Virus record (IMG/VR): IMGVR_UViG_3300010158_000027
Location: 1 to 64,000 of that record
Length of the DNA: 64,000 nucleotides
Reading direction: 5' to 3' (one strand)
Shown: piece by piece, positions 5,025-47,695 of the stretch
How positions within the stretch are numbered: the first letter of the stretch is position 1
Layout: each line of letters opens with the position of its first letter
The notes under the pieces: generated by a model
The model's database searches: none
The model's input: the letters and a program-made list of their open reading frames with translations, nothing else
Told to the model about the DNA's origin: nothing
Translations under genes and position numbers: made by a program

Positions 5025-5027
5025 TTT

Positions 5028-8022: not shown

Positions 8023-8067
8023 GAAATTTAAAATACGGCTTAGGACCGATATTGCTACGGCAATAGG

Positions 8068-8099
8068 AACCCCCATGTGTATCGCTACCTATGGGGGTT
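8068..8099. terminator. Bidirectional terminator
   Basis: AACCCCCAT...ATGGGGGTT stem between convergent genes. Confidence 0.7.
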
Positions 8100-8106
8100 T
8101 ATTTTT

Positions 8107-11431: not shown

Positions 11432-11457
11432 CATTGTATTTATATAAAAAAGAAATT

Positions 11458-11937: not shown

Positions 11938-11938
11938 T

Positions 11939-19076: not shown

Positions 19077-19077
19077 T

Positions 19078-20993: not shown

Positions 20994-21260
20994 ATGAATA
21001 AGCTCAGAAACGATATTAAAAAAATACTTAAACTAATGGAGGTTGAAAAAACCGATGAGGAATTGGATGAAGAATCTGAGGTTAATGAAGAGGGTGAAGA
21101 AACAAGTACCGAAACGGAAACAACTACTCCTGACTCTGGAGCTCCAGGTATTTGGACAGCGGGACTGACAAGGGGACCAGCTAACCAATTAGGAAATACT
21201 AAATGGGCGGACACTGTCGGGGCACAATTAAAAAGAGGAAAGGGTAACATGTTAAAATGA
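20994..21260 (+). CDS. Small leader-bearing protein
   Basis: TATTTAT at 20981-20987. Confidence 0.75.
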   Translation: MNKLRNDIKKILKLMEVEKTDEELDEESEVNEEGEETSTETETTTPDSGAPGIWTAGLTRGPANQLGNTKWADTVGAQLKRGKGNMLK

Positions 21261-27906: not shown

Positions 27907-30447
27907 ATGGGAGATTTTAAATATTCGGGTGGTGTTGAGATTGTAGGGTTTATATCCCCTACCGATTCTACCGATTTATATCCAGTTATTGACCCTTTAT
28001 ATGGTATTGATGGATTTAGAAACGTTGATACTATATCCGATTTAAATAATATACCAAATCTTAGAAGACGATCAGGAATGGTTGTCGGGGTAAGTGGTGG
28101 TACAACTTATTATAAATTAAATTCAAGTCCGTGGGTTGGGGACATAACCGATTGGAGTGACTTTTTTGGTTCTTTCACTGGTAGTTCGGGAACTAGCGGT
28201 GTGAATGGGACTTCTGGCACTAGCGGAATCGATGGAACTTCTGGAGTTAATGGTACTTCTGGTACTAGCGGAATATCAGGGACTAGTGGTGTTAGCGGTA
28301 CTAGCGGTATCGATGGGACATCTGGAATGGACGGCACTTCTGGGGTTAACGGAACTTCGGGAATAGACGGAACGTCAGGTATTTCTGGAACTAGCGGAAT
28401 TGATGGTACATCAGGTACTAGCGGAATTGATGGTACATCAGGCATTAATGGAACAAGTGGAATTAATGGTACTAGTGGGTTATCAGGAACATCCGGAACA
28501 TCAGGTATCGATGGATTAAACGGTACGTCTGGAATAAATGGTACTTCAGGTACTAGTGGAACGTCAGGTATTAACGGTACATCAGGTACTAGTGGTATTA
28601 ATGGGTTAAATGGTACATCAGGAACTAGCGGAGTTAATGGATTAAATGGGACATCTGGAACCAGCGGTATTAATGGTACTAGCGGAACATCAGGGGTTAA
28701 TGGATTAAATGGGACATCTGGAACTTCGGGAATAAACGGAACATCTGGTATCAACGGAACATCTGGGACTTCAGGTTTAAATGGTACATCCGGAACTAGT
28801 GGAACATCTGGAATATCAGGTACAAGTGGAATAAATGGTACATCAGGTATTGACGGAACGTCTGGCGTTAATGGTACTTCTGGAACTAGTGGAATATCAG
28901 GAACTAGTGGAATATCAGGAACTAGTGGTGTTAGTGGAACTAGCGGAACGTCTGGGGTTAACGGTACAAGTGGAACATCAGGATTATCTGGCAGTTCAGG
29001 TACTAGTGGTGTAGATGGTACTTCTGGTGTTAGTGGGACAAGCGGAACGAGTGGAATAGATGGTACATCGGGAATAAATGGTAGTTCGGGAACTAGCGGT
29101 ATAAACGGCACATCAGGCATAGATGGATCCAGTGGGACAAGCGGTATTGGCGGAACGTCAGGTACTAGCGGATTAGATGGTTCATCGGGCACATCAGGAA
29201 TTAACGGTACTAGTGGAATCAATGGTACGTCTGGTATTGATGGTACATCAGGTATAGACGGGACTAATGGGACAAGTGGCGTTAGTGGTAGTTCAGGTAC
29301 TAGCGGTGTTGACGGATCATCGGGTACAAGTGGTGTAGATGGTACATCAGGTATTAACGGTTCTAATGGGACTAGCGGTACTTCAGGCACTAGCGGTATA
29401 AATGGAACTTCTGGAACAAGCGGAATTAATGGTACGTCCGGCATATCAGGAACAAGTGGCGTGGATGGGACATCAGGAATTAACGGCACTAGCGGAATTG
29501 ATGGTACATCTGGGATTGATGGGTCATCAGGTACCAGTGGGGTTAATGGTACAAGCGGCGTTAGTGGTAGTTCAGGTACTAGCGGTATTGATGGGACATC
29601 AGGTACTAGTGGGGTAAATGGGTCTTCCGGTACGTCAGGAATAAGCGGAACATCGGGAATTGATGGGACGTCTGGAGTAAATGGAACCAACGGAACTTCA
29701 GGTATCAACGGTACAAGTGGAATTAATGGAACATCAGGTGTGGATGGATCTTCAGGTACTAGCGGAACATCAGGTACTAGTGGTATAGATGGTACATCTG
29801 GAATTAACGGCACTAGTGGTATAGATGGTACATCAGGATTAAACGGAACTTCTGGAACTAGCGGAATAGATGGAACTTCTGGAACTAGCGGAATAGATGG
29901 AACTTCTGGAACTAGCGGAATAGATGGAACTTCTGGAACTAGCGGCACAAGTGGACTTGATGGGGTATTTACGGGAGGAACAATAAGTGCATCGACAATA
30001 TTCTTAAGTGGACTAACAGCAAATACGATTTCCGCGACTACATATTACAACCTACCAATAAAGATTAATATTGATTTTGGATTCGATGCGACGTACTCAA
30101 CAACAAGTAATACTTTCGCTCAAATACCATTAAACGTTGTTATACAAAGTGCTAGCACTTATAACGACACATACACAGGTATAAACGCAACTTTAATTTG
30201 TGATGTTAGCCAATCCGACGCTGGAATCGCTGGGGAGTTTGAATTATATGATTTAACAAATTCAACATCAATTGCGACATCAACAACATCATTTATCGAT
30301 ACGGACGATTTAAAAATGTCATCACTCTTTTCAATATTAGATTCAAATTTTGATGATTCCTTTAGAATAAGGGTAAGAAGAACGGGGGGTACCGGTTCTG
30401 ATAATGTTAGAATTAGATCAGCACAATTACTTTTAACTTTAATATAA
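27907..30447 (+). CDS. Collagen-like (Gly-X-Y, proline-free) fibre protein
   Basis: About 200 [12 protein letters not shown] triplets between globular ends. Confidence 0.85.
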   Translation: MGDFKYSGGVEIVGFISPTDSTDLYPVIDPLYGIDGFRNVDTISDLNNIPNLRRRSGMVVGVSGGTTYYKLNSSPWVGDITDWSDFFGSFTGSSGTSGVNGTSGTSGIDGTSGVNGTSGTSGISGTSGVSGTSGIDGTSGMDGTSGVNGTSGIDGTSGISGTSGIDGTSGTSGIDGTSGINGTSGINGTSGLSGTSGTSGIDGLNGTSGINGTSGTSGTSGINGTSGTSGINGLNGTSGTSGVNGLNGTSGTSGINGTSGTSGVNGLNGTSGTSGINGTSGINGTSGTSGLNGTSGTSGTSGISGTSGINGTSGIDGTSGVNGTSGTSGISGTSGISGTSGVSGTSGTSGVNGTSGTSGLSGSSGTSGVDGTSGVSGTSGTSGIDGTSGINGSSGTSGINGTSGIDGSSGTSGIGGTSGTSGLDGSSGTSGINGTSGINGTSGIDGTSGIDGTNGTSGVSGSSGTSGVDGSSGTSGVDGTSGINGSNGTSGTSGTSGINGTSGTSGINGTSGISGTSGVDGTSGINGTSGIDGTSGIDGSSGTSGVNGTSGVSGSSGTSGIDGTSGTSGVNGSSGTSGISGTSGIDGTSGVNGTNGTSGINGTSGINGTSGVDGSSGTSGTSGTSGIDGTSGINGTSGIDGTSGLNGTSGTSGIDGTSGTSGIDGTSGTSGIDGTSGTSGTSGLDGVFTGGTISASTIFLSGLTANTISATTYYNLPIKINIDFGFDATYSTTSNTFAQIPLNVVIQSASTYNDTYTGINATLICDVSQSDAGIAGEFELYDLTNSTSIATSTTSFIDTDDLKMSSLFSILDSNFDDSFRIRVRRTGGTGSDNVRIRSAQLLLTLI

Positions 30448-30448: not shown

Positions 30449-33400
30449 ATGGAAATAAAAATTTACGGTGAAGATTCACCATTAAGTGGGGGAACAAGAT
30501 ATGTAACAGCCATAAGTGCCGAAACGGGGTTTTTTGATTCTTTTACCATCACCGACATTCAATCGGGATCGTCAGTTGCTAGTTTATTTATAACGGAATC
30601 GGGATCCGTTATATCGGGAGAAACTAATAATTTTACGGGAGACACGTATTGGACATCAGGAACTACAGGAACTACATCAATTAAAGCAATTAATAGTACG
30701 GGGTTAGACTCTACGGGTAATCGGTCAGTGGCTTGGGGTAATCAAACTTTAGCTCTGGGGGATGATTCTACAGCTTGGGGTTATCTTACAACTGCCGGAT
30801 GGAAAGGATTTACAGTATCATCGGTAGTTGCCGGTTTAATTACCATATCAGATAACGTAGATTATTCTACTGAATTTACAAGTGGAACCGTACTGTTAGA
30901 CAGTACTCAATACACATATAACACAGTTACATTTAGTTCTCCAAATTTTACGATTCAATTAAACGATACTACCGTTAATACTGGAACATATGTATCCGAT
31001 TTATCAAATTTAAATAGTCCGTTAGCCACAGTTACTGTAGGTAATGGTGCTCACTCCGCTGGGGACAGTACTAAATCGTTAGGTAATTACTCCCACGCAG
31101 AAGGTCAAAATACTTTAGCCTCAGGAGATTATTCACACGCAGAAGGATATTATGCAATATCATCTGGCGATTATTCTCACGCAGAAGGTTCTGGTACAAT
31201 AGCATCTGGTAGTTATTCACACGCCGAAGGTGACAATACCGTAGCTATTGGAAATAATTCTCACGCAGAAGGTACTAGTACAACAGCATCTGGAAAATCA
31301 TCACATGCTGAAGGTAATACCACAACAGCAGTTGCGGATTATTCACACGCAGAAGGTGGTAATACAACAGCATCTGGTGTCTATTCTCATGCAGAAGGTA
31401 ATAATACTACCGCATCTGGAATTAGTTCACACGCAGAAGGTGACAGTACAACGGCATCCGGTGATTATTCTCACGCAGAAGGTAATAATACTACCGCATC
31501 TGGAATTGGTTCACACGCAGAAGGTGCTAGTACAATATCTTCCGGTGATTTTTCCCACACAGAAGGATTTCAAACCAAAACCGGTGGTAACAACGGATAT
31601 TTAGCAATATCAGTATCGGCTGGGTTAGTTACTTTAGATGCGTCATATGGAGACGTATCCGCAGATTACCCTACAGGAAATTATTTATATCTTAATGATT
31701 ACGCATATAATAATAGTTACACGACAGTTGCATTAATAATCGACTCAACATCGTTTAATGGAACCGAAACTGAAATTCTATTAATAGACACTAGCATAAC
31801 AACTACAACCGCGGTTGTTGGAAACATAAACCTAAACCCTGCTAACTGGACCGGTGACCAGGTATATGGTGCACCAAATTCACACGCAGAAGGTGATAAT
31901 ACATTAGCATCTGGATATGCGTCACACGCAGAAGGTGTATCTGCAATTGCCGCTGGTGGTAATTCACATGCTGAAGGAAACTTCGCAATCGCGATTGGTG
32001 GTTATTCACACGCAGAAGGTACCAATACTAAATCAACCGGAGATGGTTCTCATGCAGAGGGTATTACCACTCAATCATCGGGTCTGTATTCACACGCAGA
32101 AGGCCAAGATACACTCACAATTGGACAATATTCTCACGCTGAAGGTAATTTAACGACGGCCGGGTGGCGAGCATTTACTGTAACATCAGTAGTGGCAGGT
32201 TTAATTACTATATCAGATAACGTAGATTATACAGCAGCATTTACTAGCGGTGAAGTACTATTAGATACTCGAGTGTATACATATAATACCATTGCATTTA
32301 CTTCCCCAGATTTCACAATTCAATTAGATGATACTACAGTTAATTCTGGAACATATGTAGCTGATTTCTCAAATTTAAATAGTCCATTAGCTAGTTATAT
32401 TGCTGGAACTGGTGCTCATTCAACAGGTAATGGTACTAAAGCATTAGGTGATTTTTCCGAAACGGGTGGTGATATTACGTTAGCGTCTGGTTATGGGTCA
32501 CATGCAGAAGGGTCTTCGACTCAAGCCACAGGAGATGCTTCCCATTCAGAAGGTGTTAATACACGAGCAGAAGGTCCACATGCACACTCCGAAGGTTATC
32601 TTACAAGAGCATCTGGTGATGCGGCACACGCAGAAGGTAAAACATCTATAGCTCATGGTTACTATTCTCACGCCGAAGGCCAACAAACAACAGCATATGG
32701 TCAATCTTCTCATGCAGAAGGCAACAGTACAACGGCATCTGGATCATATTCGCATGCTGAAGGTGCCGGTACTGAAACTAGAGGTAATGCCGCACACGCT
32801 GAAGGGTCTTCGACTATTGCAATTGGTGATTATTCACACACAGAAGGTAATACTACTCAATCAGGTTGGAGAGGGTTCGGCGTATCATCAGTAGTCGCTG
32901 GATTAATCACTATTAATGATGATATAGATTATTCAGCCGAATTCCCTGGTAGTGATGTATTATTAGATAATATAATTTATTCTTATAACTCAATTTCGTT
33001 TAGTTCTCCTAGTTTTACTATACAATTAGATGACATTACAATTAATACAGGAACGTATGTAGCTGATTTAACTAATTTAACTAGTACCGCATATCTAGCA
33101 ACCACACTTGGTGCTTATTCCCATGCAGAAGGTGAAAATACATTGGCATCTGGTCCGGCATCACACGCAGAAGGTGAAAGTACATCAGCTACTAGTGATT
33201 ATTCCCACGCAGAAGGTTTTAATACTTTAGCATCTGGTAGTTACTCTCACGCTGAAGGTGGTGGCACAACGGCATCCGGAGAGTATTCTCACGCTGAAGG
33301 TGGTGGCACAACGGCATCTGGTGGTGCATCACACGCAGAAGGTCAAGCAACTCAAGCATCTGGTCAATCATCTCACGCAGAAGGTGAAAGTACAACGGCA

Positions 33401-36400
33401 TCTGGCGATTATTCGCACGCAGAAGGTGCTGGTACCGTAGCATCTGGATATGCGGCACACGCAGAAGGTGATGGAACAATATCATCTGGTAACTATTCCC
33501 ACTCAGAAGGTGATGGAACAATATCATCTGGTAACTATTCCCACGCAGAAGGTACGTCAACGATTGCTGGATGGCGAGCATTTACTGTAACATCAGTAGT
33601 GTCTGGTTTAATAACTATATCAGATAACGTAGATTACTCTTCTGTATTTAATAGTAATATTGTTATATTAGATAACAATGAATACGGATATAACACAATT
33701 GCGTTCAGTTCACCAAATTTTACAATTCAATTAAATGATACTAACGTCAATACTGGAACATATGTTGCCGATTTCTTAAATTTAAATAGTCCATTAGCGA
33801 CCACCACCTTAGGGAATGGTACCCACTCCGCCGGGGATGGTACTAAAGCATTTGGTAATTATTCACACGCAGAAGGAACGGGAACGGTATCATATGGGGT
33901 ATCATCACACTCCGAAGGTTACGGATCATACACTTATGGGGATTATAGTCACTCAGAAGGTTATGCATCATCAACATATGGAAATCAGAGCCACGCTGAA
34001 GGTGGATCGACAGCAACATTTGGAAATTACAGCCACGCTGAAGGTTATGGTACGCAATCAGGTTGGAGAGCGTTTCCAGTATCCTCAGTAGTTGCTGGGT
34101 TAATAACCATATCGAATAATGTTGATTACACTTCTCAATTTACTTTGGGTGGGGGTAAAGTCATATTAGACAATAATTTATACACTTATAATACAATTTC
34201 ATACTCAGCGCCAAACTTTACAATACAATTAGATAACATCACGGTTAGTACTGGTAGTTATGTTGCGGATTATACTAATTTAAGTAGCTCGTGGGCGACA
34301 ATAGTCTTAGGTACTGCTTCTCACTCTGAAGGAACTGGAAATATATCGACGGGTGATTATAGTCACGCCGAAGGACAAGGAACGACTTCTATCGGTCAAA
34401 GTTCGCATTCTGAAGGGTTTTTAACAAAATCAATTGGAATTGCATCTCACTCTGAAGGTTATAGTACGACATCTATTGGTTCGTATTCCCATTCTGCTGG
34501 TTATAACGCAATCGCCAGCGGTAATACATCATTTATCCATTCAACTAATTCAGTTGTTGGTGGAGATAGAAGTGTGGTGTTAGGTGGACAAAACATTACA
34601 GGATTAACAAACGATACGGTTTATGTTCCTTATTTTAATTTAAATTATACCCCAATATTCAGTAATTCAAATACGGAAATTTTAAGTAGAAATTCATCAA
34701 ATGGTGATGTCGAATATACGCCACTAAGCGCATTTACAAGTCTTGATACGTATGTCACTGGATATACATATTCACCAACCACAAATACATTCACTATTAA
34801 ACAAAATCAAGGACAACCTAACATATCGGCATCGTTTGATAGTGTATCTGGTTTGACAGTTAACGGTTTATTGGAAGCAAATTCAATGTCGGCTAACACT
34901 TTTAGTGCCACAAGTATAGATAAAGTAGATTATATCATATTCAATACTGGAACAACAAGTGCAGCAACTGTTGCTGGTATGGTTTATTTTGATAATACAG
35001 AAAAATCGTTATCATATAATACATCAATTAATCAAGGAGTTACCGTTAACTTAGGACAACAAAACTATATTAGAGTGTTTAATAATAGTGGTGTTGATAT
35101 TCAAAGAGGTAAAGCTTTGGAGGTTTTATCTGCTTATAGTGGGTTACCATCAGTAACTCTCGCAGTTAATAAACATACGGGTTTTAATATTATTGGTGTT
35201 TCATCTGAAATCATACCTAACAACACCGAAGGTATTGCTATCACAAACGGAATTATTTCAGATATTCAATTAACCGGTATAACGGTTGGTTCTTTAGTTT
35301 ACGCATCAGATACCGTACCAGGTAAATTAGATGATGTTACAAATTATCTAAACTTCCCTCTTACGGCAAGAACAAATAGTGTTGGTTATGTGGTTCAAAC
35401 TGGAATCACAACTGGTAAATTATTCGTTAATATTAACAATGAGAATTCAGTATTATCTTTAACCGATTTAGAACGAAATGTATTGGAAGGAAATACATTA
35501 TCAACCGGTTTATTTGGGTTTACTGGGATGACAACTGGATCAACAACAACTTTTAATGTTGCTCCGTTGAAAGGTTGGTTGATTAAAAATACATATGAAT
35601 ATGCTACATTACCAGATGTTCAGAGTGTTAATTATACTGGTGGTACAAACATATCAGTCACTAATATTGCTTCAGCAGATTCAACATTTATTTTAATCAA
35701 TAGTGCTATAACTATTACACAACAAACAACATTTCCAACACCACAACAGAGAAGAGAAAATATCTATCTGGGTAAGATTAATCACCCAAATAGAACGAGT
35801 ATATTAAATATAAACAATACAGCTGATTATGATGTATCACCAATGTCATCTTTGCGTGATTTATGGTCACCTATAAGATTGATAAATCAAGGAATCGTAC
35901 CTTCACCAAATGGTGCTAATCTAAGTTTTAACACATCGGCCGGTATACTGTGGGGTAATGGTATTAATTGGCATAATAATCAATTAAGTCCTAATAATGT
36001 TAGTATTGCAGCAAAAGTTCCAGTATCGTTTAATTATAGAACACAAACTGGTGGAACTTCCACTAGTGTCACAGTTATTGACCCTCGTAATTATGATGTT
36101 GGTGGTGTAATAACTAGTATTGGTAATGCTGGTCTTGATGATGCAACTAATCAACGAATATATATGTACCCTACTGGTGTTATTAATGTTCTTTATGGTC
36201 AAACAGTATATACCAATTTAACTGCCGCTGTTGCTGCTGTACAGTCAGAGTCATTTATACCTTACCCTAATGCTGATAGCAGTGGTATACTTATTGGTGT
36301 ACTTTCGGTTAGAAATGATATTGGTACTGATGGACAATCATTAACCAATACGAGTTATGCTAAATTCACTTTTGTTTCTAAGTTTGGTGAAAGTTTTGGT

Positions 36401-38692
36401 GGAACTGGTGGTTTGTCAACAACAACACTTCAACAAGCGTATGATAATTCAACAACCCCAGAAATAACTACCAACGCAACGTTAGGTGGTTTATCGATAA
36501 AAAATGGTACTGGAAATGCCGATAACGTAACAAATTTAATAGAAGGTTTAAATGCCGCTGGTAACACAACATCATTTATTAGAGCTGATGGTGATATTTC
36601 TGGTACAACAATACAAACAAATGGTTTTACAGCAAATACTGGTGGAATGACAGCCACAACAGTTTCTGCCACAACAATTAATACTAATGGTGTTACCGCA
36701 ACAACAATTAATACAGGGGGGTTTAGTGCTAACGGAAATGGTTTAACCGCAACAACAATATCAGCAACAACATTACAAACGGGTGGGTTTTCCGCTAACA
36801 CTACAGGACTATCAGCATCAACTGTTAATATAAGAACAATCGGTAGTGGGTCCTCAGTTACCAACTTAGGTGTCGATTCTTCGGGTAATGTTGTCAGTGG
36901 TAGTACCCCTTCAATACCACAAGCTAATAAAATTTATGTTGATTCAATTAATGGGACTAATTCAACAGGTCAAGGAAATATTAACGCACCATACTTAACA
37001 GTAGAATACGCATTATCAGACATAACTAATACGGGAACGGTTACCGCAACCACTGCGAATGGTAGTGCGACATTAACATCCGTAAGTTCTACGGCTAATA
37101 TTGTTATAGGACAATTTATTACTGGTACTGGCATCCCATATAATTCAGTGGTTGTTAGTAAGACACCCAACACAATTGTATTAAGTCAATTATGTACAGC
37201 ATCAGCCACTATTACTGCAACTTGGTGGACTATTTATGAACTTATTCTGAACGGTAATTTTGTATGGGTTTCTAATTGGTTTAAACAAGGTTTTTTTATA
37301 AATGCTCAAACTTCAACTATATCATTCTCAGGAGTATTGTTATCACCAACTAGTCCTGTAGTACCAATAGTATTTAAAGGTGGTTTTTTATACGGAACAT
37401 CCGCATCAAGTAAATTTTTATCTATAAATGGGAGTTCAGTTGTAAAAGTATTTTTAAATCCAACAACTTATTCGAGTAGTGGTACTGGATATCAAATAGA
37501 TTGTAATCAAAATGGTAGTTCAAAATTTGATTCATTATATTTATTATGTGATAGTTTCTTAGCGAATTTTGGGTCAATTGCGGATATTGAAAGTGGTGGA
37601 GTATCTACCATAAAGGGTAATTATTATGGACTTTTGAGTGGTATTAGACTAAGATTCGCTACTATATTTTTTGATGGTGATTTAATTTGTCCAACTTCGG
37701 TTGCAGCATTTACGTCCGTAACTAGCGGTTATTTATTCACTAACGGTAGAATAACGGGAAATCTTTCAATACAAAGTAGTGGTGGTGTAGTTAATAGTAC
37801 CGTTACGGGTACTGCTCACTCATTGGGTTCAATTAGTACGGATTTGTTACAAACATTTAATGGTAAAATATTAGGAACTGTATCTGTACAAGGAATTTGC
37901 ACATTTAATGGAGTTGTTTATGGTAATATAACGGTGGTTGGTGGAACATCAATTTTTTTGGGTGTTTCAACTACAGTTGCAACTGTTACAACTAGCATAT
38001 CTGTTTCTAACGCAAAAGTGATAGCAACGGGTATGGCATCGATAGTTTCAGGAATTAATGGTATTGGGAATATAACTCTAACAAATTCAGCAACTTTAGA
38101 TATATTAGATAATGTAATAGGGGTTTCATACACCACTTATTCATCTGTACCCTTTATTTCTGTGGACGCAACATCAACATTAAATTTATATAAAACTAAT
38201 TTTGGAAACATATCTAGTTGTGCGGGAACGATTAACGTGTATGGTATATTTTCACATATTAATAAATCCGCAGACATAACGGGGTCATTAAACAATAAAG
38301 GTGGGACAATACAATTATTAAGATCTACCACAGAATCTGCAACTAGCACACCAACATTATTAATCTCTGGAGGTACATACCAACAAAACGGTGGTAAATT
38401 GTTATGTGCGGTATCAGATTCTAAATCGGGATTATTAAGAAAAACGGCAACGGGAGGTAAAATACAATTAATTAATCAGGCATATTTAAAGGTCGCAAAT
38501 GGGTTAGCTCCAATACAAATAATATCAAATACGGGGACAGCTCAAGATGTTGAAGTTTATTCGGTAATCGATAATTGTGCGGTTGGATTTAGAATTTCAA
38601 ACACATTTACCGATACAACATATGGAACAGCATATTCTCCAAATATTTTAGTGGGGGGTACGATGTTAGAAGATACAACTTATTTATTATAA
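30449..38692 (+). CDS. Giant adhesin/tail fibre with YadA-head-like 14-aa SHAEG repeats and a beta-helical C-terminus
   Basis: About 50 SHAEG-type repeats in six blocks; Gly/Ser/Thr-rich beta-strand C-terminal half. Confidence 0.8.
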   Translation: MEIKIYGEDSPLSGGTRYVTAISAETGFFDSFTITDIQSGSSVASLFITESGSVISGETNNFTGDTYWTSGTTGTTSIKAINSTGLDSTGNRSVAWGNQTLALGDDSTAWGYLTTAGWKGFTVSSVVAGLITISDNVDYSTEFTSGTVLLDSTQYTYNTVTFSSPNFTIQLNDTTVNTGTYVSDLSNLNSPLATVTVGNGAHSAGDSTKSLGNYSHAEGQNTLASGDYSHAEGYYAISSGDYSHAEGSGTIASGSYSHAEGDNTVAIGNNSHAEGTSTTASGKSSHAEGNTTTAVADYSHAEGGNTTASGVYSHAEGNNTTASGISSHAEGDSTTASGDYSHAEGNNTTASGIGSHAEGASTISSGDFSHTEGFQTKTGGNNGYLAISVSAGLVTLDASYGDVSADYPTGNYLYLNDYAYNNSYTTVALIIDSTSFNGTETEILLIDTSITTTTAVVGNINLNPANWTGDQVYGAPNSHAEGDNTLASGYASHAEGVSAIAAGGNSHAEGNFAIAIGGYSHAEGTNTKSTGDGSHAEGITTQSSGLYSHAEGQDTLTIGQYSHAEGNLTTAGWRAFTVTSVVAGLITISDNVDYTAAFTSGEVLLDTRVYTYNTIAFTSPDFTIQLDDTTVNSGTYVADFSNLNSPLASYIAGTGAHSTGNGTKALGDFSETGGDITLASGYGSHAEGSSTQATGDASHSEGVNTRAEGPHAHSEGYLTRASGDAAHAEGKTSIAHGYYSHAEGQQTTAYGQSSHAEGNSTTASGSYSHAEGAGTETRGNAAHAEGSSTIAIGDYSHTEGNTTQSGWRGFGVSSVVAGLITINDDIDYSAEFPGSDVLLDNIIYSYNSISFSSPSFTIQLDDITINTGTYVADLTNLTSTAYLATTLGAYSHAEGENTLASGPASHAEGESTSATSDYSHAEGFNTLASGSYSHAEGGGTTASGEYSHAEGGGTTASGGASHAEGQATQASGQSSHAEGESTTASGDYSHAEGAGTVASGYAAHAEGDGTISSGNYSHSEGDGTISSGNYSHAEGTSTIAGWRAFTVTSVVSGLITISDNVDYSSVFNSNIVILDNNEYGYNTIAFSSPNFTIQLNDTNVNTGTYVADFLNLNSPLATTTLGNGTHSAGDGTKAFGNYSHAEGTGTVSYGVSSHSEGYGSYTYGDYSHSEGYASSTYGNQSHAEGGSTATFGNYSHAEGYGTQSGWRAFPVSSVVAGLITISNNVDYTSQFTLGGGKVILDNNLYTYNTISYSAPNFTIQLDNITVSTGSYVADYTNLSSSWATIVLGTASHSEGTGNISTGDYSHAEGQGTTSIGQSSHSEGFLTKSIGIASHSEGYSTTSIGSYSHSAGYNAIASGNTSFIHSTNSVVGGDRSVVLGGQNITGLTNDTVYVPYFNLNYTPIFSNSNTEILSRNSSNGDVEYTPLSAFTSLDTYVTGYTYSPTTNTFTIKQNQGQPNISASFDSVSGLTVNGLLEANSMSANTFSATSIDKVDYIIFNTGTTSAATVAGMVYFDNTEKSLSYNTSINQGVTVNLGQQNYIRVFNNSGVDIQRGKALEVLSAYSGLPSVTLAVNKHTGFNIIGVSSEIIPNNTEGIAITNGIISDIQLTGITVGSLVYASDTVPGKLDDVTNYLNFPLTARTNSVGYVVQTGITTGKLFVNINNENSVLSLTDLERNVLEGNTLSTGLFGFTGMTTGSTTTFNVAPLKGWLIKNTYEYATLPDVQSVNYTGGTNISVTNIASADSTFILINSAITITQQTTFPTPQQRRENIYLGKINHPNRTSILNINNTADYDVSPMSSLRDLWSPIRLINQGIVPSPNGANLSFNTSAGILWGNGINWHNNQLSPNNVSIAAKVPVSFNYRTQTGGTSTSVTVIDPRNYDVGGVITSIGNAGLDDATNQRIYMYPTGVINVLYGQTVYTNLTAAVAAVQSESFIPYPNADSSGILIGVLSVRNDIGTDGQSLTNTSYAKFTFVSKFGESFGGTGGLSTTTLQQAYDNSTTPEITTNATLGGLSIKNGTGNADNVTNLIEGLNAAGNTTSFIRADGDISGTTIQTNGFTANTGGMTATTVSATTINTNGVTATTINTGGFSANGNGLTATTISATTLQTGGFSANTTGLSASTVNIRTIGSGSSVTNLGVDSSGNVVSGSTPSIPQANKIYVDSINGTNSTGQGNINAPYLTVEYALSDITNTGTVTATTANGSATLTSVSSTANIVIGQFITGTGIPYNSVVVSKTPNTIVLSQLCTASATITATWWTIYELILNGNFVWVSNWFKQGFFINAQTSTISFSGVLLSPTSPVVPIVFKGGFLYGTSASSKFLSINGSSVVKVFLNPTTYSSSGTGYQIDCNQNGSSKFDSLYLLCDSFLANFGSIADIESGGVSTIKGNYYGLLSGIRLRFATIFFDGDLICPTSVAAFTSVTSGYLFTNGRITGNLSIQSSGGVVNSTVTGTAHSLGSISTDLLQTFNGKILGTVSVQGICTFNGVVYGNITVVGGTSIFLGVSTTVATVTTSISVSNAKVIATGMASIVSGINGIGNITLTNSATLDILDNVIGVSYTTYSSVPFISVDATSTLNLYKTNFGNISSCAGTINVYGIFSHINKSADITGSLNNKGGTIQLLRSTTESATSTPTLLISGGTYQQNGGKLLCAVSDSKSGLLRKTATGGKIQLINQAYLKVANGLAPIQIISNTGTAQDVEVYSVIDNCAVGFRISNTFTDTTYGTAYSPNILVGGTMLEDTTYLL

Positions 38693-40722: not shown

Positions 40723-43122
40723 ATGTCGAATAAAAGAATTTCACAGTTACCATATATAGGTGCAGATAAAATTTCGGGCAATACCTTAGTCCCTTTAGTC
40801 ACTTACTATTCAGCGACTACAGGAACTACCGTACACTCAAATCTCGGTGATGTACAATCGTTTATACTAAGCGGACAGACATTAACGGGAGGAACGTATA
40901 ACTCAACATCGGGTAATCTTACGTTAGTTAATAATAGTGGTGGAACCATAATAATTTCAGGAATAACTTCATCAGCGGGTACTAGTGGGACATCTGGTAC
41001 GTCAGGTATTAATGGTATAAATGGTACTAGCGGTATTGACGGCACTAGTGGAATATCAGGAACTAGCGGTATTGACGGAACTTCAGGGTTAAGCGGAACT
41101 AGCGGTATTGACGGAACTTCAGGGTTAAGCGGAACTAGTGGTATCGATGGAACGTCAGGTGTAAACGGTACTAGCGGCACATCAGGAACGAGCGGTATTG
41201 ATGGGACTTCAGGTGTAAGTGGAACTAGCGGAAGTAGTGGTACGTCGGGAATTAACGGAACTAGCGGGGTAAGTGGTACATCAGGTATTAACGGAACGTC
41301 AGGAACGAGTGGAATAAATGGTACTAGTGGTATTAACGGCACTAGTGGAGAGTCGGGATCATCAGGGACTAGCGGAATAAACGGTAGTTCAGGTACGTCA
41401 GGTACAAGTGGAATAATTTATATTACAAATCAAACCACAGGTTCGGTGACGTATTACACAACATTGGAACTTGCGAGAGATGGATCTGTTTCTGGAGATA
41501 CTATATATGTAAATACTGGAACATATATAGTAACTACAACCGCAGCTAACGGATTAAGTAAAAGTGGAGTGAATTGGTATTTTCAACCAGGTACGGTAGT
41601 GTCTAAAGTAACATCAGGTCACATATTTAGTGATAATGGTTTTGCTCTTAATGCGAATGTGTATGGAAATGGAACTTTTACTAAATCAACAACCACAGGT
41701 AATATATTTTATAATACATTATCAAACGCAATATTTGAAGCAAAATCAGTTACATCAAGTATAGATGATTGTTTTTTAACAACAACAGCTTCAAATTTAT
41801 ATTTCAATGTTAAATTTGCCGTATCAAGTGGTGGTAGAGTTTTACATATAGCCGGTTATTCAACAAGTCTTATAAAAATTGATATGATATCTTGGAGATC
41901 CACAGCGTCTAATTGTATCGGAGGAACTACCTGGTGGTATAATACTGATGTTCAAGTAACTGGGGAATTATTAGAATCTACAACGGCACAAGCTGTGGGT
42001 AATTATAATAGTGGAGCCGTATTAAATTTAAATATTACAAAAATACTTGGAGTAACTTATGCTTTATCTTCAGGTGATGGAAGTAATGGATATCCAAATA
42101 TTATAAATTGTGCTTATTGTACAGGTATATCAGATATTGGTAAAAATTATATCCTTAATGGTCAATTTGGGGTATTAAATTATGTTGGTAGTAATGGTGC
42201 CTTTGTTAATGGTGGAAGATTTGCAACAATTACTTTAACAGGTGGTGGACATGTAATTACAACTCTTGGGGCTAATTTTACACTACCTTCTACTGGTACA
42301 ATAACACAAAGTTCTGGGGTATTAGACGTAACTATTGATACTTTTCATTATGGTATTGGATTTACCATAACAGGAGGTGTTTGTAATATTAGGAATCAAT
42401 CAGTATCAAACCAATTATCAGGAGCTTTAGATAGAATAGTAAATGGTGGAACATTAAACTTATATACTAATTTTATTCATGGTGGAAATCCTGATTCTGG
42501 AGTATGGTATGCGATGAAATTACAATCAGGAACATTAAGACTATTAGCTTCAGTACAAAATAACTTTAATGTTGCATCAAGTAATTTAGCGGCACACGGA
42601 ATAGTATGGGTTGGTGGTAAATTAATTATTGATAGATCAACTATTTTTATAACAGATACCGTTGCATTACCGATACAAGCAACAACCGCTGGTTTATCTT
42701 TAAGAGTTCTTACAGGTGGATTAAGCACAAATATTACGGCGGATGGGGGAGTATTACCAGGTAAAAAAATGAAATATAAATTTACCATAAGCGCAGTTGC
42801 AGCAACAGGAATAAATATTTTAATACCAACCTCTTATAACATTTCAGAATCAAACACTGGGGTGTATAATACTAAAGCTCTTTTAGCTCAACGAATGGCT
42901 TCATTAATTAATGGTAGTCCATTTTTAAATGTTGCGGTAATTGCTACACAAGACATACCAGGAACTGATGAATACTTTTATATAGAAACATTAACCGCGG
43001 GCCCCACATTTTCATATAATACTCCTGTTAATTTTTCAGCTATTAATATTCAAAGATGGAATAGTTATACTATAACGAACATAACTGGAGGATCAATTTT
43101 AGAAAACTCAAACGTAGAATAA
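40723..43122 (+). CDS. Fibre protein with GTS collagen-like stalk and beta-helix-like C-terminal domain
   Basis: [10 protein letters not shown] start; GTS block; [11 protein letters not shown] beta-helix cap motif. Confidence 0.75.
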
Positions 43123-43123: not shown

Positions 43124-43459
43124 ATGGAATTACAAAACATAGTAGTAGACTTTAAAGAAATCACAACAACCACAATGTATAAAGACGTACATTATGATGT
43201 GGATGTTATGTCGGAGATTGAACCCGTTAAAATTGAGTTTGAGATTGCTTATGGTATCACATTCGATAGAGCAATAATACAATTAACTGAGGATCAACAT
43301 TTATGTGAACCAAGAATACTTTGTCAAAAAGAAGATGAACAAACGATTATAACTATTGTAGATATAAGAGATAATCATCCATCACTTATGTTGGAATTAG
43401 ATAAAATAAAATTATTAATTGAAGAACAATTACTTAATAATACGAATAATGGCGATTAG
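43124..43459 (+). CDS. Small acidic protein after fibre (chaperone candidate)
   Basis: Position and size only. Confidence 0.6.
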
Positions 43460-45338
43460 AGATAAGATAATAAGTGGGGGTAATGGTATAAATTTTACTA
43501 AGGAGACGGATTCTAGTACTGACTGGACTGGAATTACCAATAACACATATTTTAGAGATGTTGCGGACGGATTAATACATTATAAAAATTCGTCTGGATC
43601 AATATTAGAAATATATAATCTAAGTACTTCGGGGACTAGTGGAACATCAGGTACTTCCGGAATAAATGGTATTAACGGAACGTCAGGAACGAGTGGTGTA
43701 AATGGTTTAAACGGAACTAGCGGAACATCGGGTATAAATGGGACGTCTGGAACAAGCGGTATAAATGGGACGTCAGGAATCAACGGTACAATCGGTTTAA
43801 GTGGAACATCAGGAACAAGTGGTACCAATGGGTTAAACGGCACATCTGGAACGAGCGGATCATCAGGGACTAGTGGAATTAATGGAACATCAGGTACTAG
43901 CGGTAGAAATGGGACATCTGGTATAGATGGAACGTCTGGTACGTCAGGTAGAAATGGTACTTCAGGGACTAGCGGGATATCACCAACAGTATCAGGGTCT
44001 AATGACCAAATACTGACTTCAAATGGTGCTGGTGGAATTATTGCCGAATCTCTTTTAACATTTGACGGTACAAAATTAAGCGTATTGTATCAAGCCGGTG
44101 ATGAAGGTGGTGAAATATTATTAAATAAACCTGAAACCAACACTACCATTTCAGGTACAGGGGTTACTTTTGATGTATGGCAAAATAGAATTAGGTTTTT
44201 TGAACAAGGTGGAACGGCAAGAGGTGCGTATATTGATATAACTGAATGTGCTGCCGGTGTCGGTACAAACCTTTTAACTGGTGGGTCAACTTCATCAGGA
44301 ACCAGTGGCACATCGGGTAGAAATGGTACATCTGGTATTAACGGAACTAGCGGGACATCCGGAACAAGTGGTGTTAATGGTAGTAGTGGAACTAGTGGAG
44401 TTAATGGTACTTCAGGAATAAACGGCACTAGTGGTACGTCAGGTAGAAATGGAACATCAGGAATTGATGGTACGTCGGGTACAAGTGGTATTAACGGTAC
44501 ATCAGGAACTAGTGGTGTTAACGGCACATCTGGTACTTCAGGAATCAATGGACAAAATGGAACATCTGGAACATCTGGAACATCTGGAACTTCAGGAACG
44601 AGCGGTATAGCACTTATATTAAATAATACCAACAATTACGTTTTAACCGCGACAGGTACTTCAGGGGTTATAAATGGTGAATCTAACTTAACTTTTGATG
44701 GTACAACTGCAATTATAACAGGAAATCTAAATGTATCCGGAGGTACACAATCTATCTTCTCTGGAAATAGTACTTTAGAGTTAGTTAAGATAATTCAAAC
44801 GGGAACAGGGGATGCACTTGTTGTTGAGGATTCATCAAATGGTGACACTTCACATTTCGTTATCGACGCTAGTGGTAATACGTCAATAGGAACATCTACA
44901 ACGGGAAGAAAGTTAACAGTGTCTGGAGATTCAACATTCATTCATAATCCATTAACTCTTTTAACCGCATCAGTTACCGCATATGGGGATATAGTAACTT
45001 TTGGTAGTGGGTCATTAACTGCGGGTAGTTTATATTACCTAGGTAGTGGAGGATCATGGACAGCTGCAGATGCCAGTTCAAGTACATCATCAACTGGGTT
45101 ATTAGGTATCGCTTTAGGTACAACCGCTTCATCAGGGTTATTAATAAAGGGGTACGCCAGATCCACCACATACTCAGCAACAACAGGTCAGATATTATAC
45201 GTATCAACAACCGCCGGTTCAATCACTCCAACCGCGCCATCAGCCGCTACCGAAATAATTAGAATAATTGGGTATCAGTTATCCACAAATGATGATGTCA
45301 TATACTTTACCCCTTCAAATGATTGGATAGAATTATAA
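43449..45338 (+). CDS. Fibre protein with two GTS collagen-like blocks
   Basis: GTS blocks at about 43623-43980 and 44290-44607. Confidence 0.75.
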
Positions 45339-46875: not shown

Positions 46876-47090
46876 CTATATCTAAAATTAAAAATGGGTT
46901 ATCATGGAATAATCAGGATAAATTTTTTACAACTAATTTTTATTCAGACGGTTACACCATTCCAGATATTATCCACATAGTATTGGAATTAAATCAAACA
47001 ATATATTGGTTTAATTGCCAAGAAATAACAATCGATGGATTAAGATTTAATGACCCAATAGAAGTTAGAAACTATTTATTTGTACCGTGA
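46863..47090 (+). CDS. Small hypothetical protein
   Basis: ORF coupled to its neighbours. Confidence 0.6.
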   Translation: MDILAISKIKNGLSWNNQDKFFTTNFYSDGYTIPDIIHIVLELNQTIYWFNCQEITIDGLRFNDPIEVRNYLFVP

Positions 47091-47695
47091 GATACTTTAA
47101 AAATATAAAAGACATATACCCAAAATACGATAAGTTTGGTGACTATTTTATTTTAACAAAAAAAATAGAAAGGGGTATTGGTAATGAAAATTTTGATTCG
47201 GAGTTTGAATTAAGTTATTCCGGATTAGTTGAAGACACAACTTACGAAACCAATAAAGAGTTCATCGCACTATTAAATAAAAACGGAGACTTGGTAATGT
47301 CGAATTCGAATTCAATGTTGAGACATTACAAACCATATTTAGATTCATCAAATGGTGAAGTTTTAATATCAGGATTAGGTTTAGGGTTATCACTATTACC
47401 CCTATTAGAGGATAGTGCCGTAACTAAAATCGACATTATAGAAATGGATATGGATATAATAGAATATGTTTACATTAATAGATTAAAAAAGTTAGACATT
47501 AATAATAAAATTAATATTATCAACCACGACATTTTTACATTCGAAACGACAAACACCTACGATTATATTTTATTAGATACGTGGTCGTCCCCAGATGAAA
47601 CATCAATATCGGAAGCGAACACATTAAAACTTAAGTTCACATCAAATTTAAAAAGTGGTGGATCAATTGATGTTCCTATTTTAGATTTTAATTAA
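47087..47695 (+). CDS. Class I SAM-dependent methyltransferase (spermidine-synthase-like fold)
   Basis: VLISGLGLG motif I, IDIIEMD, IINHDIF, YDYILLD. Confidence 0.75.
   Translation: MRYFKNIKDIYPKYDKFGDYFILTKKIERGIGNENFDSEFELSYSGLVEDTTYETNKEFIALLNKNGDLVMSNSNSMLRHYKPYLDSSNGEVLISGLGLGLSLLPLLEDSAVTKIDIIEMDMDIIEYVYINRLKKLDINNKINIINHDIFTFETTNTYDYILLDTWSSPDETSISEANTLKLKFTSNLKSGGSIDVPILDFN

What the first reader, a model, noticed from the sequence alone, without database searches (positions are those of the whole stretch)
27907..30447. About 200 proline-free Gly-X-Y triplets built almost only from GTS, GIN, GID and GVN
Seen: about 595 aa with no register break that I noticed (about 28180-29965); shorter blocks in 40723 and 43449. 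X is T/I/V/L/S and Y is S/N/D, giving many N-G-T sequons. Known: collagen triple helices normally rely on Pro/Hyp or charge pairs, and glycosylated Thr can substitute. At about 0.29 nm per residue this would be a filament of about 170 nm. Inference: it folds only when glycosylated by the downstream GT, or adopts a polyglycine-II bundle or ice-binding-like surface.
Basis: partly seen in the sequence, partly recalled or inferred. Interest (0 to 1): 0.6.

Follow-up and report, generated by a model that had tools for sequence, protein, structure and literature searches.

The report
Proline-free phage collagen fibre with dedicated glycosyltransferase
A freshwater jumbo phage encodes a fibre protein with 199 unbroken Gly-X-Y triplets that lack both proline and salt-bridge residues, and this sequence class travels with a phage-encoded TibC-like protein O-glycosyltransferase, so sugar rather than proline or charge may hold this collagen together.

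Summary
ORF 27907..30447 (+, 846 aa) holds 199 uninterrupted Gly-X-Y triplets (window 28180-29970) with 0 Pro, 0 Lys/Arg/Glu and 42% Ser+Thr. Three more proline-free collagen-like ORFs lie in the same 281-kb genome, a T4-like-distant jumbo myovirus from lake metagenomes.

It belongs to a large, uncharacterised class, (G-[T/S]-[S/N/D])n. Relatives carry up to 861 unbroken triplets. Gly is exactly one third and there is no turn periodicity, which fits a collagen-type triple helix (about 170 nm) and not a polyglycine-II bundle.

The new result concerns the "downstream GT" (47729..50815, 1028 aa). It is a three-module enzyme whose C-terminal module belongs to the TibC/Aah family, which O-heptosylates serines of repeat adhesins (TIGR04414, 274 bits against a cut-off of 200; catalytic Asp and four iron-finger Cys conserved).

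- 35 of 80 viral loci anchored on this module carry such a collagen-like gene, with a median gap of 1.1 kb.
- 0 of 80 capsid-anchored loci of the same clade do.
- At whole-genome level the split is 7/1 against 0/5.

That folding depends on glycosylation is untested.

The parts
27907..30447 (+). Collagen-like fibre protein A, 846 aa, the finding itself
   Evidence: ORF. Pfam Collagen PF01391, E 4.2e-87. PHROG tail-fibre families; phrog_5073 at 3.7e-89 also covers the non-collagen C-terminus, residues 586-834.
27907..28179 (+). N-terminal domain (residues 1-91), presumed virion-attachment domain
   Evidence: 64% identical paralogue in a 164-aa ORF at genome 111285..111779. 48% identical stretch in huge phage LR756502. 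Only weak PHROG hits. Function inferred.
28180..29970 (+). 199 uninterrupted Gly-X-Y triplets, proline-free and Lys/Arg/Glu-free; presumed triple-helical shaft of about 170 nm
   Evidence: The triple helix is inferred from strict Gly periodicity, Gly at one third, and the absence of any turn periodicity.
29845..29945 (+). Perfect 27-bp x3.7 tandem repeat (GTSGTSGID) at the C-terminal end of the array; recent duplication, assembly-uncertain copy number
   Evidence: TRF shows 100% matches. Public contigs break at 29874/29916.
29971..30444 (+). C-terminal part: about 30 aa of a widespread fibre-shaft motif (TGGTISASTIFLSGLTANTISATTYYNL), then a tip domain of about 125 aa
   Evidence: The whole tip is 76% and 66% identical in P0001 (a YadA-head-repeat protein without collagen) and P0002. 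The short motif recurs 731 times in 120 fibre-like proteins. No PDB relative by sequence profile.
30449..38692 (+). Neighbouring giant fibre protein, 2747 aa, with 46 YSHAEG-type repeats (YadA-head-like)
   Evidence: PF05658 YadA_head, 4.7e-07. Motif count. Not linked to the GT in other phages: 0 of 80 loci.
40723..43122 (+). Collagen-like fibre protein B, 799 aa; 49 proline-free triplets at 40978-41418, then a long non-collagen C-terminal region
43419..45338 (+). Collagen-like fibre protein C, 639 aa; proline-free blocks of 39 and 35 triplets (43632-43982 and 44298-44612)
47087..47695 (+). Methyltransferase-like protein, 202 aa, directly upstream of the GT
   Evidence: phrog_15480 methyltransferase, 7e-12. 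Weak Spermine_synth fold match. In relatives an FkbM methyltransferase is fused to, or adjacent to, the GT.
47729..50815 (+). Three-module glycosyltransferase, 1028 aa. Residues 1-300 are GT-A/GT8-like (47729-48628). Residues ~303-640 are GT4 (48635-49648). Residues 686-1023 are a TibC/Aah-type protein O-heptosyltransferase (49784-50797).
   Evidence: PF00534 6.3e-13 and PF01075 8.8e-06. TIGR04414 at 273.7 bits against a cut-off of 200. TibC PDB 4RAP/4RB4, E 1e-59 for the single sequence and 1.5e-75 for the profile. The N-terminal module is a look-alike lead only.

Best explanation
ORF 27907..30447 is a structural fibre protein of a freshwater jumbo myovirus.

Three chains are proposed to join through the end domains. 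The central 597 residues would then wind into a collagen-type triple helix, a thin rod of about 170 nm that holds a small C-terminal tip domain away from the virion.

The rod has none of the usual collagen stabilisers: no proline or hydroxyproline, and no Lys-Gly-Glu/Asp salt bridges. Instead every X/Y pair is either Thr/Ser-Ser or hydrophobic-Asn/Asp.

The proposed mechanism runs in four steps:
1. The chains are O-glycosylated in the host cytoplasm on Ser (perhaps also Thr) by the phage's own TibC/Aah-like module of the 1028-aa glycosyltransferase at 47729..50815.
2. The GT4 and GT-A-like modules of the same protein extend the sugar.
3. The neighbouring methyltransferase possibly caps it.
4. 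The sugar coat, together with hydroxyl and amide hydrogen bonding, supplies the stability and protease resistance that proline and charge give in other collagens.

Shown here: the sequence pattern, the GT family assignment, and the genomic linkage.
Inferred: the trimer, the triple helix, glycosylation of this protein, and any role of that glycosylation in stability.
For: (1) Strict Gly at every third residue for 199 triplets, Gly 33.5%, no periodic turns, and selection at the protein level shown by the two Ser codon families.

(2) Phage fibre context.
- PHROG tail-fibre families match, including the non-collagen C-terminus.
- The genome has terminase, portal, gp23-like capsid, sheath and gp25 genes.
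- Four modular paralogues carry the same triplet type on different end domains.

(3) The GT module is TibC/Aah family.
- TIGR04414 scores 273.7 bits against a cut-off of 200.
- TibC structures match at E 1e-59 to 1.5e-75.
- TibC's catalytic Asp110, iron-finger Cys339/342/358/370 and sugar-binding Thr226/Lys230/Trp305 are all conserved.
- TibC is a cytoplasmic Ser-O-heptosyltransferase of repeat adhesins (PMC4358343).

(4) Linkage.
- 35 of 80 viral loci anchored on this module (48-78% identity) have a proline-free run of at least 10 triplets within 10 kb.
- 0 of 80 capsid-anchored loci of the same clade do (Fisher 5e-13, not corrected for relatedness).
- The median gap is 1.08 kb in 24 non-redundant loci.
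- A divergent phage (GT modules 38-47% identical) has GT4+FkbM and GT4+TibC-like genes directly upstream of its GTS collagen gene.

(5) Whole genomes at least 82% complete.
- GT and GTS-collagen both present in 7: this genome, G001-G004, Microcystis phage Mel-JY01, and the 735-kb LR756501.
- Both absent in 5, including G007, a 100%-complete 296-kb close relative.
- GT only in 1. Collagen only in 0.
- Fisher 0.005.

(6) The linked collagens form one sharp class. Over 6351 triplets there are 0.002 Pro and 0.006 Lys/Arg/Glu per triplet. X is T 71% and S 20%. Y is S 57% and N 34%.

(7) Precedent from the literature. Ac-(Gly-Pro-Thr)10 is a random coil, but becomes triple-helical when every Thr carries galactose (PMC11923368). 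BclA collagen-like regions are glycosylated (PMC8968730).
Against: - No structure prediction or experiment supports the triple helix here.
- From my own memory of host-guest peptide scales (Persikov et al. 2000, not checked here), Thr at X and Ser/Asn/Asp at Y are among the least favourable residues for a triple helix.
- The GT is 17 kb from this ORF. It lies next to collagen-like protein C, not A.
- 45 of 80 GT-anchored loci show no collagen run within 10 kb. At least two of those genomes have such genes about 40 kb away.
- One GT-bearing huge phage, LR756504, has no such collagen.
- TibC's sugar-binding Arg286 is Leu here, and the phage has no ADP-heptose pathway genes. The donor sugar is therefore unknown.
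- Known TibC/Aah substrates are beta-helix autotransporters, not Gly-X-Y chains.
- The co-occurrence statistics are not corrected for shared ancestry.
- Whether the fibre sits on the tail, neck or head is unknown.
Confidence: 0.55

Rival explanations
1. It is a collagen-type triple-helical phage fibre that folds without any modification. Stability would come from the flanking trimerising domains, from Thr/Ser/Asn/Asp side-chain and water-mediated hydrogen bonds, from its length, and from the cool lake habitat. The GT would act on something else, such as another fibre, the capsid or a host surface protein.
For: Strict Gly-X-Y pattern. Polar hydration networks stabilise hydroxyproline-free bacterial collagens such as Scl2 (PMC8968730). 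The phage comes from lake-water metagenomes. Two contig fragments carry such collagen genes without the GT, though both are only 34-41% complete and the genes lie at or near contig ends. The GT is 17 kb away from this ORF.
Against: The tight and specific linkage of the TibC-like GT to exactly this collagen class, and their joint absence in a complete close relative. Scl2 relies on charged residues, which are absent here.
Confidence: 0.22
2. It is not a triple helix. It would be a heavily O-glycosylated, extended, mucin-like or disordered Ser/Thr-rich spacer, a sugar 'bottle-brush', with the end domains alone providing oligomerisation.
For: 42% Ser+Thr. Linked protein O-glycosyltransferase. Low expected triple-helix propensity of the residues used (my memory of host-guest scales, unchecked).
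Against: A disordered or mucin-like spacer has no need for Gly at exactly every third position. That rule is kept without one break over 199 triplets here, and over up to 861 triplets in relatives. Natural indels come in whole triplets: an 18-bp insertion in a variant strain.
Confidence: 0.12
3. It folds back on itself into a polyglycine-II helix bundle, or presents an ice-binding or antifreeze-like surface.
For: Phage tail-fibre tips can use PPII bundles (S16 gp38), and snow-flea antifreeze proteins use Gly-X-X repeats (preprint 10.1101/2023.11.25.568672). The repeat is Thr-rich.
Against: Known PPII bundles need much more glycine than one third, with more Gly the more neighbours a helix has, and they use short helices joined by turns. 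Here Gly is 33.5%, 40% of X positions are Ile/Val/Leu/Met, there is no break in 597 residues, and the only autocorrelation is at lag 1.
Confidence: 0.03
4. The + strand frame is not the gene. The real product would be the Pro-rich antisense ORF 28110..29948, or the region would be non-coding repeat DNA.
For: The antisense frame is open for 612 aa. GenBank annotators of Microcystis phage Mel-JY01 called antisense ORFs over the homologous region.
Against: The + frame runs on into N- and C-terminal domains with homologues in other proteins. All neighbouring genes are on the + strand. Both Ser codon families are used in the + frame.
Confidence: 0.01

Closest known systems
Collagen-like tail-fibre and virion proteins of bacteriophages (PHROG tail-fibre families such as phrog_5073, 6320 and 1806; E. 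coli prophage EPclA; SPP1 gp12; staphylococcal 80alpha FibU)
   Same: Gly-X-Y block between non-collagen end domains, in a phage structural protein. The PHROG profiles match strongly, including part of the C-terminus. Modular exchange of end domains.
   Different: The characterised examples are short (8-40 triplets) or rely on Pro at X and about 22% charged residues (EPclA; PMC11923368). This one has 199 triplets with 0 Pro and 0 Lys/Arg/Glu, and it comes with a dedicated protein glycosyltransferase.
BclA exosporium glycoprotein of the Bacillus cereus group, and Riftia cuticle collagen (glycosylated-threonine collagens)
   Same: Hydroxyproline-free collagen-like region rich in hydroxy amino acids. 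O-glycans on the repeat are thought to stabilise the helix (PMC8968730; PMC11923368).
   Different: Those have Gly-Pro-Thr with Pro at X and Thr at Y. Here Thr is at X, Ser/Asn/Asp is at Y, and there is no Pro. Different glycosyltransferase families; no sequence relation outside the repeat was shown.
TibC/Aah bacterial autotransporter heptosyltransferases (BAHT family, TIGR04414; PDB 4RAP/4RB4). This comparison concerns the linked GT.
   Same: The family model scores above the curated cut-off. The catalytic Asp, four iron-finger Cys and three of four sugar-binding residues are conserved. The family acts in the cytoplasm on Ser residues of long repetitive surface-adhesion proteins.
   Different: Here the module is phage-encoded, fused to GT4 and GT-A-like modules, and linked to Gly-X-Y collagen-like fibres instead of AIDA-I/TibA beta-helix autotransporters. 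Arg286 is replaced by Leu. No PHROG family covers it, and only 4 of 50,697 GenBank phage records carry it.
Salt-bridge 'folding code' collagens (KGE/KGD clamps), proposed as common to all domains of life and viruses (PMC11923368)
   Same: Long Gly-X-Y domains in viral proteins.
   Different: This class has essentially no Lys, Arg or Glu: KGE 0 and KGD 1 in 6351 triplets. It is an exception to that proposed rule.
Polyglycine-II/PPII helix bundles (snow-flea antifreeze protein, phage S16 gp38 tip)
   Same: Glycine-containing tripeptide periodicity. One example sits on a phage fibre.
   Different: Bundles need much higher Gly content and short helices joined by turns. Neither is met here.

Membership tests
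Collagen triple-helix repeat proteins (Pfam PF01391 / InterPro IPR008160) | Gly at every third residue over at least 6 contiguous triplets | tested here: met
   199 contiguous triplets, residues 92-688.
Collagen triple-helix repeat proteins (Pfam PF01391 / InterPro IPR008160) | Family profile score above the curated cut-off | tested here: met
   PF01391 at 286.3 bits against a cut-off of 27.2. The score is largely driven by composition.
Collagen triple-helix repeat proteins (Pfam PF01391 / InterPro IPR008160) | Known sequence stabilisers: Pro/Hyp at X/Y, or Lys-Gly-Glu/Asp salt bridges | tested here: not met
   0 Pro and 0 Lys/Arg/Glu in 597 residues. The class average is 0.002 Pro and 0.006 Lys/Arg/Glu per triplet.
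Collagen triple-helix repeat proteins (Pfam PF01391 / InterPro IPR008160) | Trimeric triple-helical structure (CD 225-nm band, cooperative melting, rod in EM) | not testable with these tools
Collagen triple-helix repeat proteins (Pfam PF01391 / InterPro IPR008160) | Adjacent non-collagen trimerisation or nucleation domain | tested here: inconclusive
   N-terminal (91 aa) and C-terminal (158 aa) domains exist and are conserved in other fibre proteins. Their oligomeric state is unknown and they have no PDB relative.
Phage tail-fibre proteins (PHROG phrog_5073 and related) | Profile match that extends beyond the low-complexity collagen block | tested here: met
   phrog_5073 at E 3.7e-89; the best stretch covers residues 586-834 against profile positions 266-507 of 519.
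Phage tail-fibre proteins (PHROG phrog_5073 and related) | Location on the tail or baseplate of the virion | not testable with these tools
   The gene lies 18-36 kb upstream of terminase, portal and capsid, and far from the sheath (130.7 kb) and gp25 (159.7 kb). A head or neck fibre is not excluded.
BAHT / TibC-Aah protein O-heptosyltransferases (applies to the linked GT, 47729..50815) | NCBIfam equivalog model TIGR04414 above its cut-off | tested here: met
   273.7 bits against 200, residues 686-1023.
BAHT / TibC-Aah protein O-heptosyltransferases (applies to the linked GT, 47729..50815) | Catalytic base Asp110 and iron-finger Cys339/342/358/370 of TibC | tested here: met
   All five align to identical residues (SLGDTLSW; CHGC...WCP...FEC). 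Alignment, residue roles from PMC4358343.
BAHT / TibC-Aah protein O-heptosyltransferases (applies to the linked GT, 47729..50815) | Heptose-binding residues Thr226, Lys230, Arg286, Trp305 | tested here: inconclusive
   Thr, Lys and Trp are conserved. Arg286 aligns to Leu. The donor sugar may differ.
BAHT / TibC-Aah protein O-heptosyltransferases (applies to the linked GT, 47729..50815) | Acceptor is an AIDA-I/TibA-type autotransporter beta-helix | tested here: not met
   No autotransporter stood out in the annotation done here; I ran no dedicated search for autotransporter families. The linked partner across phages is the Gly-X-Y class (35 of 80 loci), not the YadA-like repeat protein (0 of 80).
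Polyglycine-II / PPII helix bundle domains | Glycine well above one third, and short PPII helices joined by turns | tested here: not met
   Gly is 33.5%. The block is uninterrupted for 597 residues and the only autocorrelation is at lag 1. Criteria are taken from the preprint read.
BclA-type glycosylated exosporium collagen | Gly-Pro-Thr repeats, with Thr at Y as the glycan acceptor | tested here: not met
   No Pro. Thr is at X in 107 of 199 triplets, and Y is Ser/Asn/Asp.

The most novel reading that the evidence does not exclude
Phages have recruited the TibC/Aah protein O-heptosyltransferase family, so far known only from autotransporter adhesins of Gram-negative pathogens, to build a third kind of collagen. 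This would be a proline-free, charge-free (G-[T/S]-[S/N])n triple helix whose folding or stability depends on dense O-glycosylation. It would allow sugar-coated fibres from 170 nm to about 740 nm (861 unbroken triplets in a relative, at 0.286 nm per residue) on jumbo and huge phages. It would also be a natural exception to the proposed universal salt-bridge folding code of collagens.
Probability: 0.3. Interest if true: 0.85.

Novelty: new variant of a known kind. Interest (0 to 1): 0.7.

Why it matters
Collagen stability is currently explained by imino acids, by hydroxyproline, or by Lys-Glu/Asp salt bridges. The salt bridges were recently proposed as a code common to all life and viruses (PMC11923368). 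This protein, and thousands of triplets in its relatives, use none of these.

If they do form triple helices, they show either a glycan-based or a purely hydroxyl/amide-based route to the fold. That is of interest for collagen biophysics and for recombinant collagen materials that need no prolyl hydroxylase.

The linked enzyme would widen the known range of the TibC/Aah family, both in where it is found (phages) and in what it modifies (collagen-like chains). It would also add a well-defined case of virion protein glycosylation in environmental jumbo phages.

A cultured phage, Microcystis phage Mel-JY01, carries the same gene pair, so the idea can be tested directly.

Tried and rejected
- **Trimer prediction.** I submitted residues 620-846 x3 to complex prediction. 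This is no evidence about the protein. I did not hand it or its parts to any other fold tool, so there is no structural model in this report.
- **PDB sequence search with the whole protein** returns only animal collagens and a generic modelled fibril (8zxl). These matches are driven by composition and say nothing about this class.
- **Tip-domain profile against PDB:** no hit.
- **DNA search of the region in GenBank phages:** no match. BLAST's low-complexity filter hides the repeat in protein mode.
- **YadA-head-like giant protein (30449..38692) as the real GT substrate.** It resembles known TibC substrates more closely, but such repeats occur in 0 of 80 GT-anchored loci, so this idea has no comparative support.
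- **Phage-encoded ADP-heptose pathway.** I searched for CTP_transf_like, SIS_2 and PfkB families. None was found.
- **Literature.** I found no paper in the held library that links TibC-like enzymes to phages' own proteins or to collagen-like proteins, and none on Mel-JY01. The library lacks most subscription journals, so absence there is weak evidence.
- **Read and contig laying.** The many 'joints' inside the repeat are cross-matches from other collagen-like genes, and I did not interpret them.
- **N-glycosylation reading of the N-G-T sequons.** No enzyme family was found to support it.
Full report

Yes. The + strand ORF 27907..30447 encodes 846 aa. Residues 92-688 (window 28180-29970) are 199 consecutive Gly-X-Y triplets without a register break.

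- Triplets: GTS 105, GID 20, GIN 20, GSS 11, GVN 10, and minor ones.
- The block has no Pro, Lys, Arg or Glu. It has 28 Asp, 36 N-x-S/T sequons, 33.5% Gly and 41.7% Ser+Thr.
- Two triplet kinds alternate. G-[T/S]-S accounts for 116 of the 119 triplets with T or S at X. G-[I/V/L]-[N/D] accounts for 63 of the 79 triplets with a hydrophobic X.
- Hydrophobic-X triplets are separated by one or two polar ones. No longer period is present.
- Ser is encoded by both AGY (61) and TCN (81) codons. The DNA units are mostly only 60-90% alike. So the periodicity is kept by selection on the protein, not by a recent DNA repeat.
- The exception is a perfect 27-bp x3.7 repeat at 29845-29945.
- The antisense 612-aa ORF is a shadow frame.

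A fourth gene lies outside the window at 183835..185139. All are proline-free.

An independent lake sample carries the array unchanged. A variant strain has an in-frame 18-bp (GTSGVN) insertion. No public contig bridges the perfect 27-bp repeat, so the exact count there is uncertain.

**2. What genome is this?**

The window is the first 64 kb of a 281,269-bp viral record, 33% G+C and 96% complete by CheckV.

- It encodes terminase, portal, a gp23-like major head protein, tail sheath, DNA polymerase and a gp25-like baseplate protein. It is therefore a tailed jumbo myovirus.
- The capsid protein is closest (42-43% identity) to an uncultured huge phage, Microcystis phage Mel-JY01 and Flavobacterium phage immuto.
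- At least 593 viral contig stretches encode a capsid relative, and the 80 best kept are 72-85% identical.
- The phage is found in lake-water metagenomes from many studies.

**3. What is the protein?**

Pfam calls the block Collagen at 4e-87. PHROG tail-fibre families match, and phrog_5073 also covers the non-collagen C-terminus.

The architecture is modular.
- A 91-aa N-terminal domain has a 64% identical paralogue in a small ORF at genome 111285..111779.
- The collagen block follows.
- Then comes a short motif (TGGTIS..GLTANTISATT) that recurs hundreds of times in other fibre-like proteins.
- Last is a tip of about 125 aa. It is 76% identical to the tip of a collagen-free YadA-head-repeat protein.

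The four collagen-like paralogues of this genome put the same triplet type on different end domains. This is the usual build of phage fibres. Whether the fibre sits on the tail, neck or head cannot be told from the gene order.

**4. How common is the composition?**

A search with residues 1-420 found 1606 proteins at E<=0.001 among the 8000 candidates scored. Of the best 120, 48 are proline-free with at least 100 triplets, and none has an unbroken run above 150.

Viral loci fetched later hold far longer runs: 861, 695, 677, 566 and 421 unbroken triplets.

So the window's protein is one member of a large metagenomic class, and not the longest. I found no description of this class in the papers I could search.

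- Reviews state that bacterial collagens typically have Pro at X and Thr at Y (PMC8968730).
- A 2025 survey proposes KGE/KGD salt bridges as a folding code shared by all domains and viruses (PMC11923368).
- This class has Thr at X, Ser/Asn at Y, and virtually no Pro or charge pairs.

**5. Triple helix or something else?**

Gly is exactly one third. X is bulky in 40% of triplets. There are no breaks and no turn periodicity.

Polyglycine-II/PPII bundles need much more glycine, arranged as short helices joined by turns (preprint read). That option is therefore unlikely.

A merely disordered, mucin-like spacer would not need Gly at every third residue over hundreds of triplets, nor indels in whole triplets.

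The collagen-type triple helix is therefore the best reading, but it is inferred.

**6. The glycosyltransferase.**

It lies at the end of the fibre module, directly after a methyltransferase-like ORF. It has three modules.

- Residues 1-300: a look-alike of viral GT-A/GT8-type transferases. This is a lead only.
- Residues ~303-640: GT4, Glycos_transf_1.
- Residues 686-1023: TIGR04414 'autotransporter strand-loop-strand O-heptosyltransferase' (Aah/TibC), at 273.7 bits against a cut-off of 200.

The third module aligns to the TibC crystal structures at E 1e-59 for the single sequence and 1.5e-75 for the profile.

- Conserved: TibC's catalytic Asp110, the four iron-finger cysteines, and sugar-binding Thr226, Lys230 and Trp305.
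- Not conserved: Arg286 aligns to Leu.

TibC and Aah heptosylate serines of long repetitive adhesins in the cytoplasm (PMC4358343). So this is a protein glycosyltransferase, not a DNA or polysaccharide enzyme.

No PHROG family covers it. Only 4 of 50,697 GenBank phage records encode the module: Mel-JY01, where it is annotated 'methyltransferase FkbM', and three huge-phage records.

**7. Is the GT linked to the collagen class?**

*Local linkage.*
- A scan of viral contigs with a profile of the TibC-like module found 497 relatives.
- Of the best 80 loci (48-78% identity, +-10 kb), 35 carry a proline-free run of at least 10 triplets.
- Of 80 loci anchored on the capsid gene of the same clade (864 kb), none does. 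Fisher gives 5e-13, uncorrected for relatedness.
- In 24 non-redundant positive loci the median gap between the GT and the collagen-like frame is 1.08 kb.
- The pooled 6351 triplets are one sharp class. X is T 71% and S 20%. Y is S 57%, N 34% and D 5%. Pro is 0.002 and Lys/Arg/Glu 0.006 per triplet. KGE occurs 0 times and KGD once.
- The YadA-like repeat protein next to ORF A is not linked to the GT elsewhere: 0 of 80 loci.
- A divergent contig, whose GT modules are only 38-47% identical, has GT4+FkbM-methyltransferase and GT4+TibC-like genes directly upstream of its GTS collagen gene.

*Whole genomes at least 82% complete.*

| GT | GTS-type collagen | Genomes |
|---|---|---|
| present | present | This genome, G001-G004, Mel-JY01, 735-kb LR756501 (7) |
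| absent | absent | G007, LR756508, immuto, RM378, LR756502 (5) |
| present | absent | LR756504 (1) |
| absent | present | none (0) |

- G007 is a 100%-complete 296-kb relative with a 73% identical capsid protein.
- LR756502 does have a collagen, but of the ordinary GAT/GSQ type.
- Fisher gives 0.005, again uncorrected for relatedness.

The phage has no ADP-heptose pathway genes. Together with the Arg286 change, this leaves the donor sugar open.

**8. Most likely mechanism.**

The fibre chains are made in the cytoplasm. The TibC-like module puts a first sugar on Ser (perhaps also Thr) of the Gly-X-Y chain. The GT4 and GT-A-like modules extend it, and a methyltransferase may cap it. Three chains then zip into a triple helix nucleated by an end domain.

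The glycans and the Thr/Ser/Asn hydrogen-bond network would replace proline and salt bridges.

There is chemical precedent. (Gly-Pro-Thr)10 is unfolded but becomes triple-helical when its threonines carry galactose (PMC11923368).

- Shown here: the sequence, the family assignment and the linkage.
- Inferred: the trimer, the helix, the modification and its role.

**9. Verdict.**

Its strong form ('folds only when glycosylated') is untested, and the polyglycine-II and ice-binding alternatives are unlikely.

As a gene, this is a new member of the known kind 'collagen-like phage fibre'. The proline- and charge-free composition, together with a dedicated TibC-like enzyme, makes it a new variant that deserves experiments.

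Noticed in passing
L037/L038 13304-21052 (- strand); L027 6003-12257; L023 13795-19887; L024 4025-9118; L044 14918-18706: Relatives carry far longer unbroken proline-free runs next to the TibC-like GT: 861, 695, 677 (GTN-rich), 566 and 421 triplets. At 0.286 nm per residue, 861 triplets would be about 740 nm if triple-helical.
   Followed up: partly
L107 (Microcystis phage Mel-JY01, PP395634.1) 1-2298 and 4750-8430: In this cultured phage the GenBank annotation calls two antisense ORFs (1-651 and 739-2298, - strand) over what is a + strand GTS/GSS collagen-like frame with a run of 149 triplets. The 1226-aa fusion protein with the TibC-like module (320 bits) is labelled only 'methyltransferase FkbM'. 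A 'cytidylyltransferase like protein' lies at 11243-13162.
   Followed up: partly
window 30449-38692: A 2747-aa ORF starts 2 bases after ORF A ends. It has 46 YSHAEG-type repeats (YadA-head-like), interspersed globular units, and many copies of the 'TANTxSATT' shaft motif. It is probably another giant fibre.
   Followed up: partly
genome 72180-73982 and 74070-75845 (L008:12180-13982, L008:14070-15845); genome 64957-67734 (L008:4957-7734): The gp23-like capsid gene is long (600 aa) and matches relatives in two pieces. It is followed by a homing-endonuclease gene. The portal ORF (925 aa) contains an HNH-endonuclease-like stretch at residues ~114-278. These may be inserted mobile elements or inteins in essential head genes.
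   Followed up: no
window 54523-56745 (-) and 53377-54429 (-): A Lon-like ATP-dependent protease (phrog_4871, E 4.6e-201) and a peptidase lie on the opposite strand just after the fibre/GT block.
   Followed up: no
window 45345-46875: Three tandem ORFs of 169-172 aa lie between collagen-like protein C and the methyltransferase/GT. None has a family match, apart from a weak hit to a virion structural PHROG for the third. They may be fibre chaperones or small fibre parts.
   Followed up: no
genome 111285-111779 (L010:11285-11779): A 164-aa ORF repeats the N-terminal domain of ORF A at 64% identity, without any collagen block. It sits between two large unannotated ORFs of 923 and 1127 aa.
   Followed up: partly
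window 28233 (run X5): A variant strain in a freshwater sediment metagenome has an in-frame 18-bp insertion encoding GTSGVN. Array length therefore varies in nature by whole triplets.
   Followed up: partly
G007 (record holding L175, 296,330 bp, 100% complete): A complete close relative (capsid 73% identical) lacks both the TibC-like GT and GTS-type collagen genes. It is a natural 'double-negative' for comparison.
   Followed up: partly
window 19024-20658 and 21257-23299: Two large ORFs upstream of the fibre block each carry a peptidoglycan-binding domain (PF01471). They are possibly virion-associated cell-wall-binding or lytic proteins.
   Followed up: no
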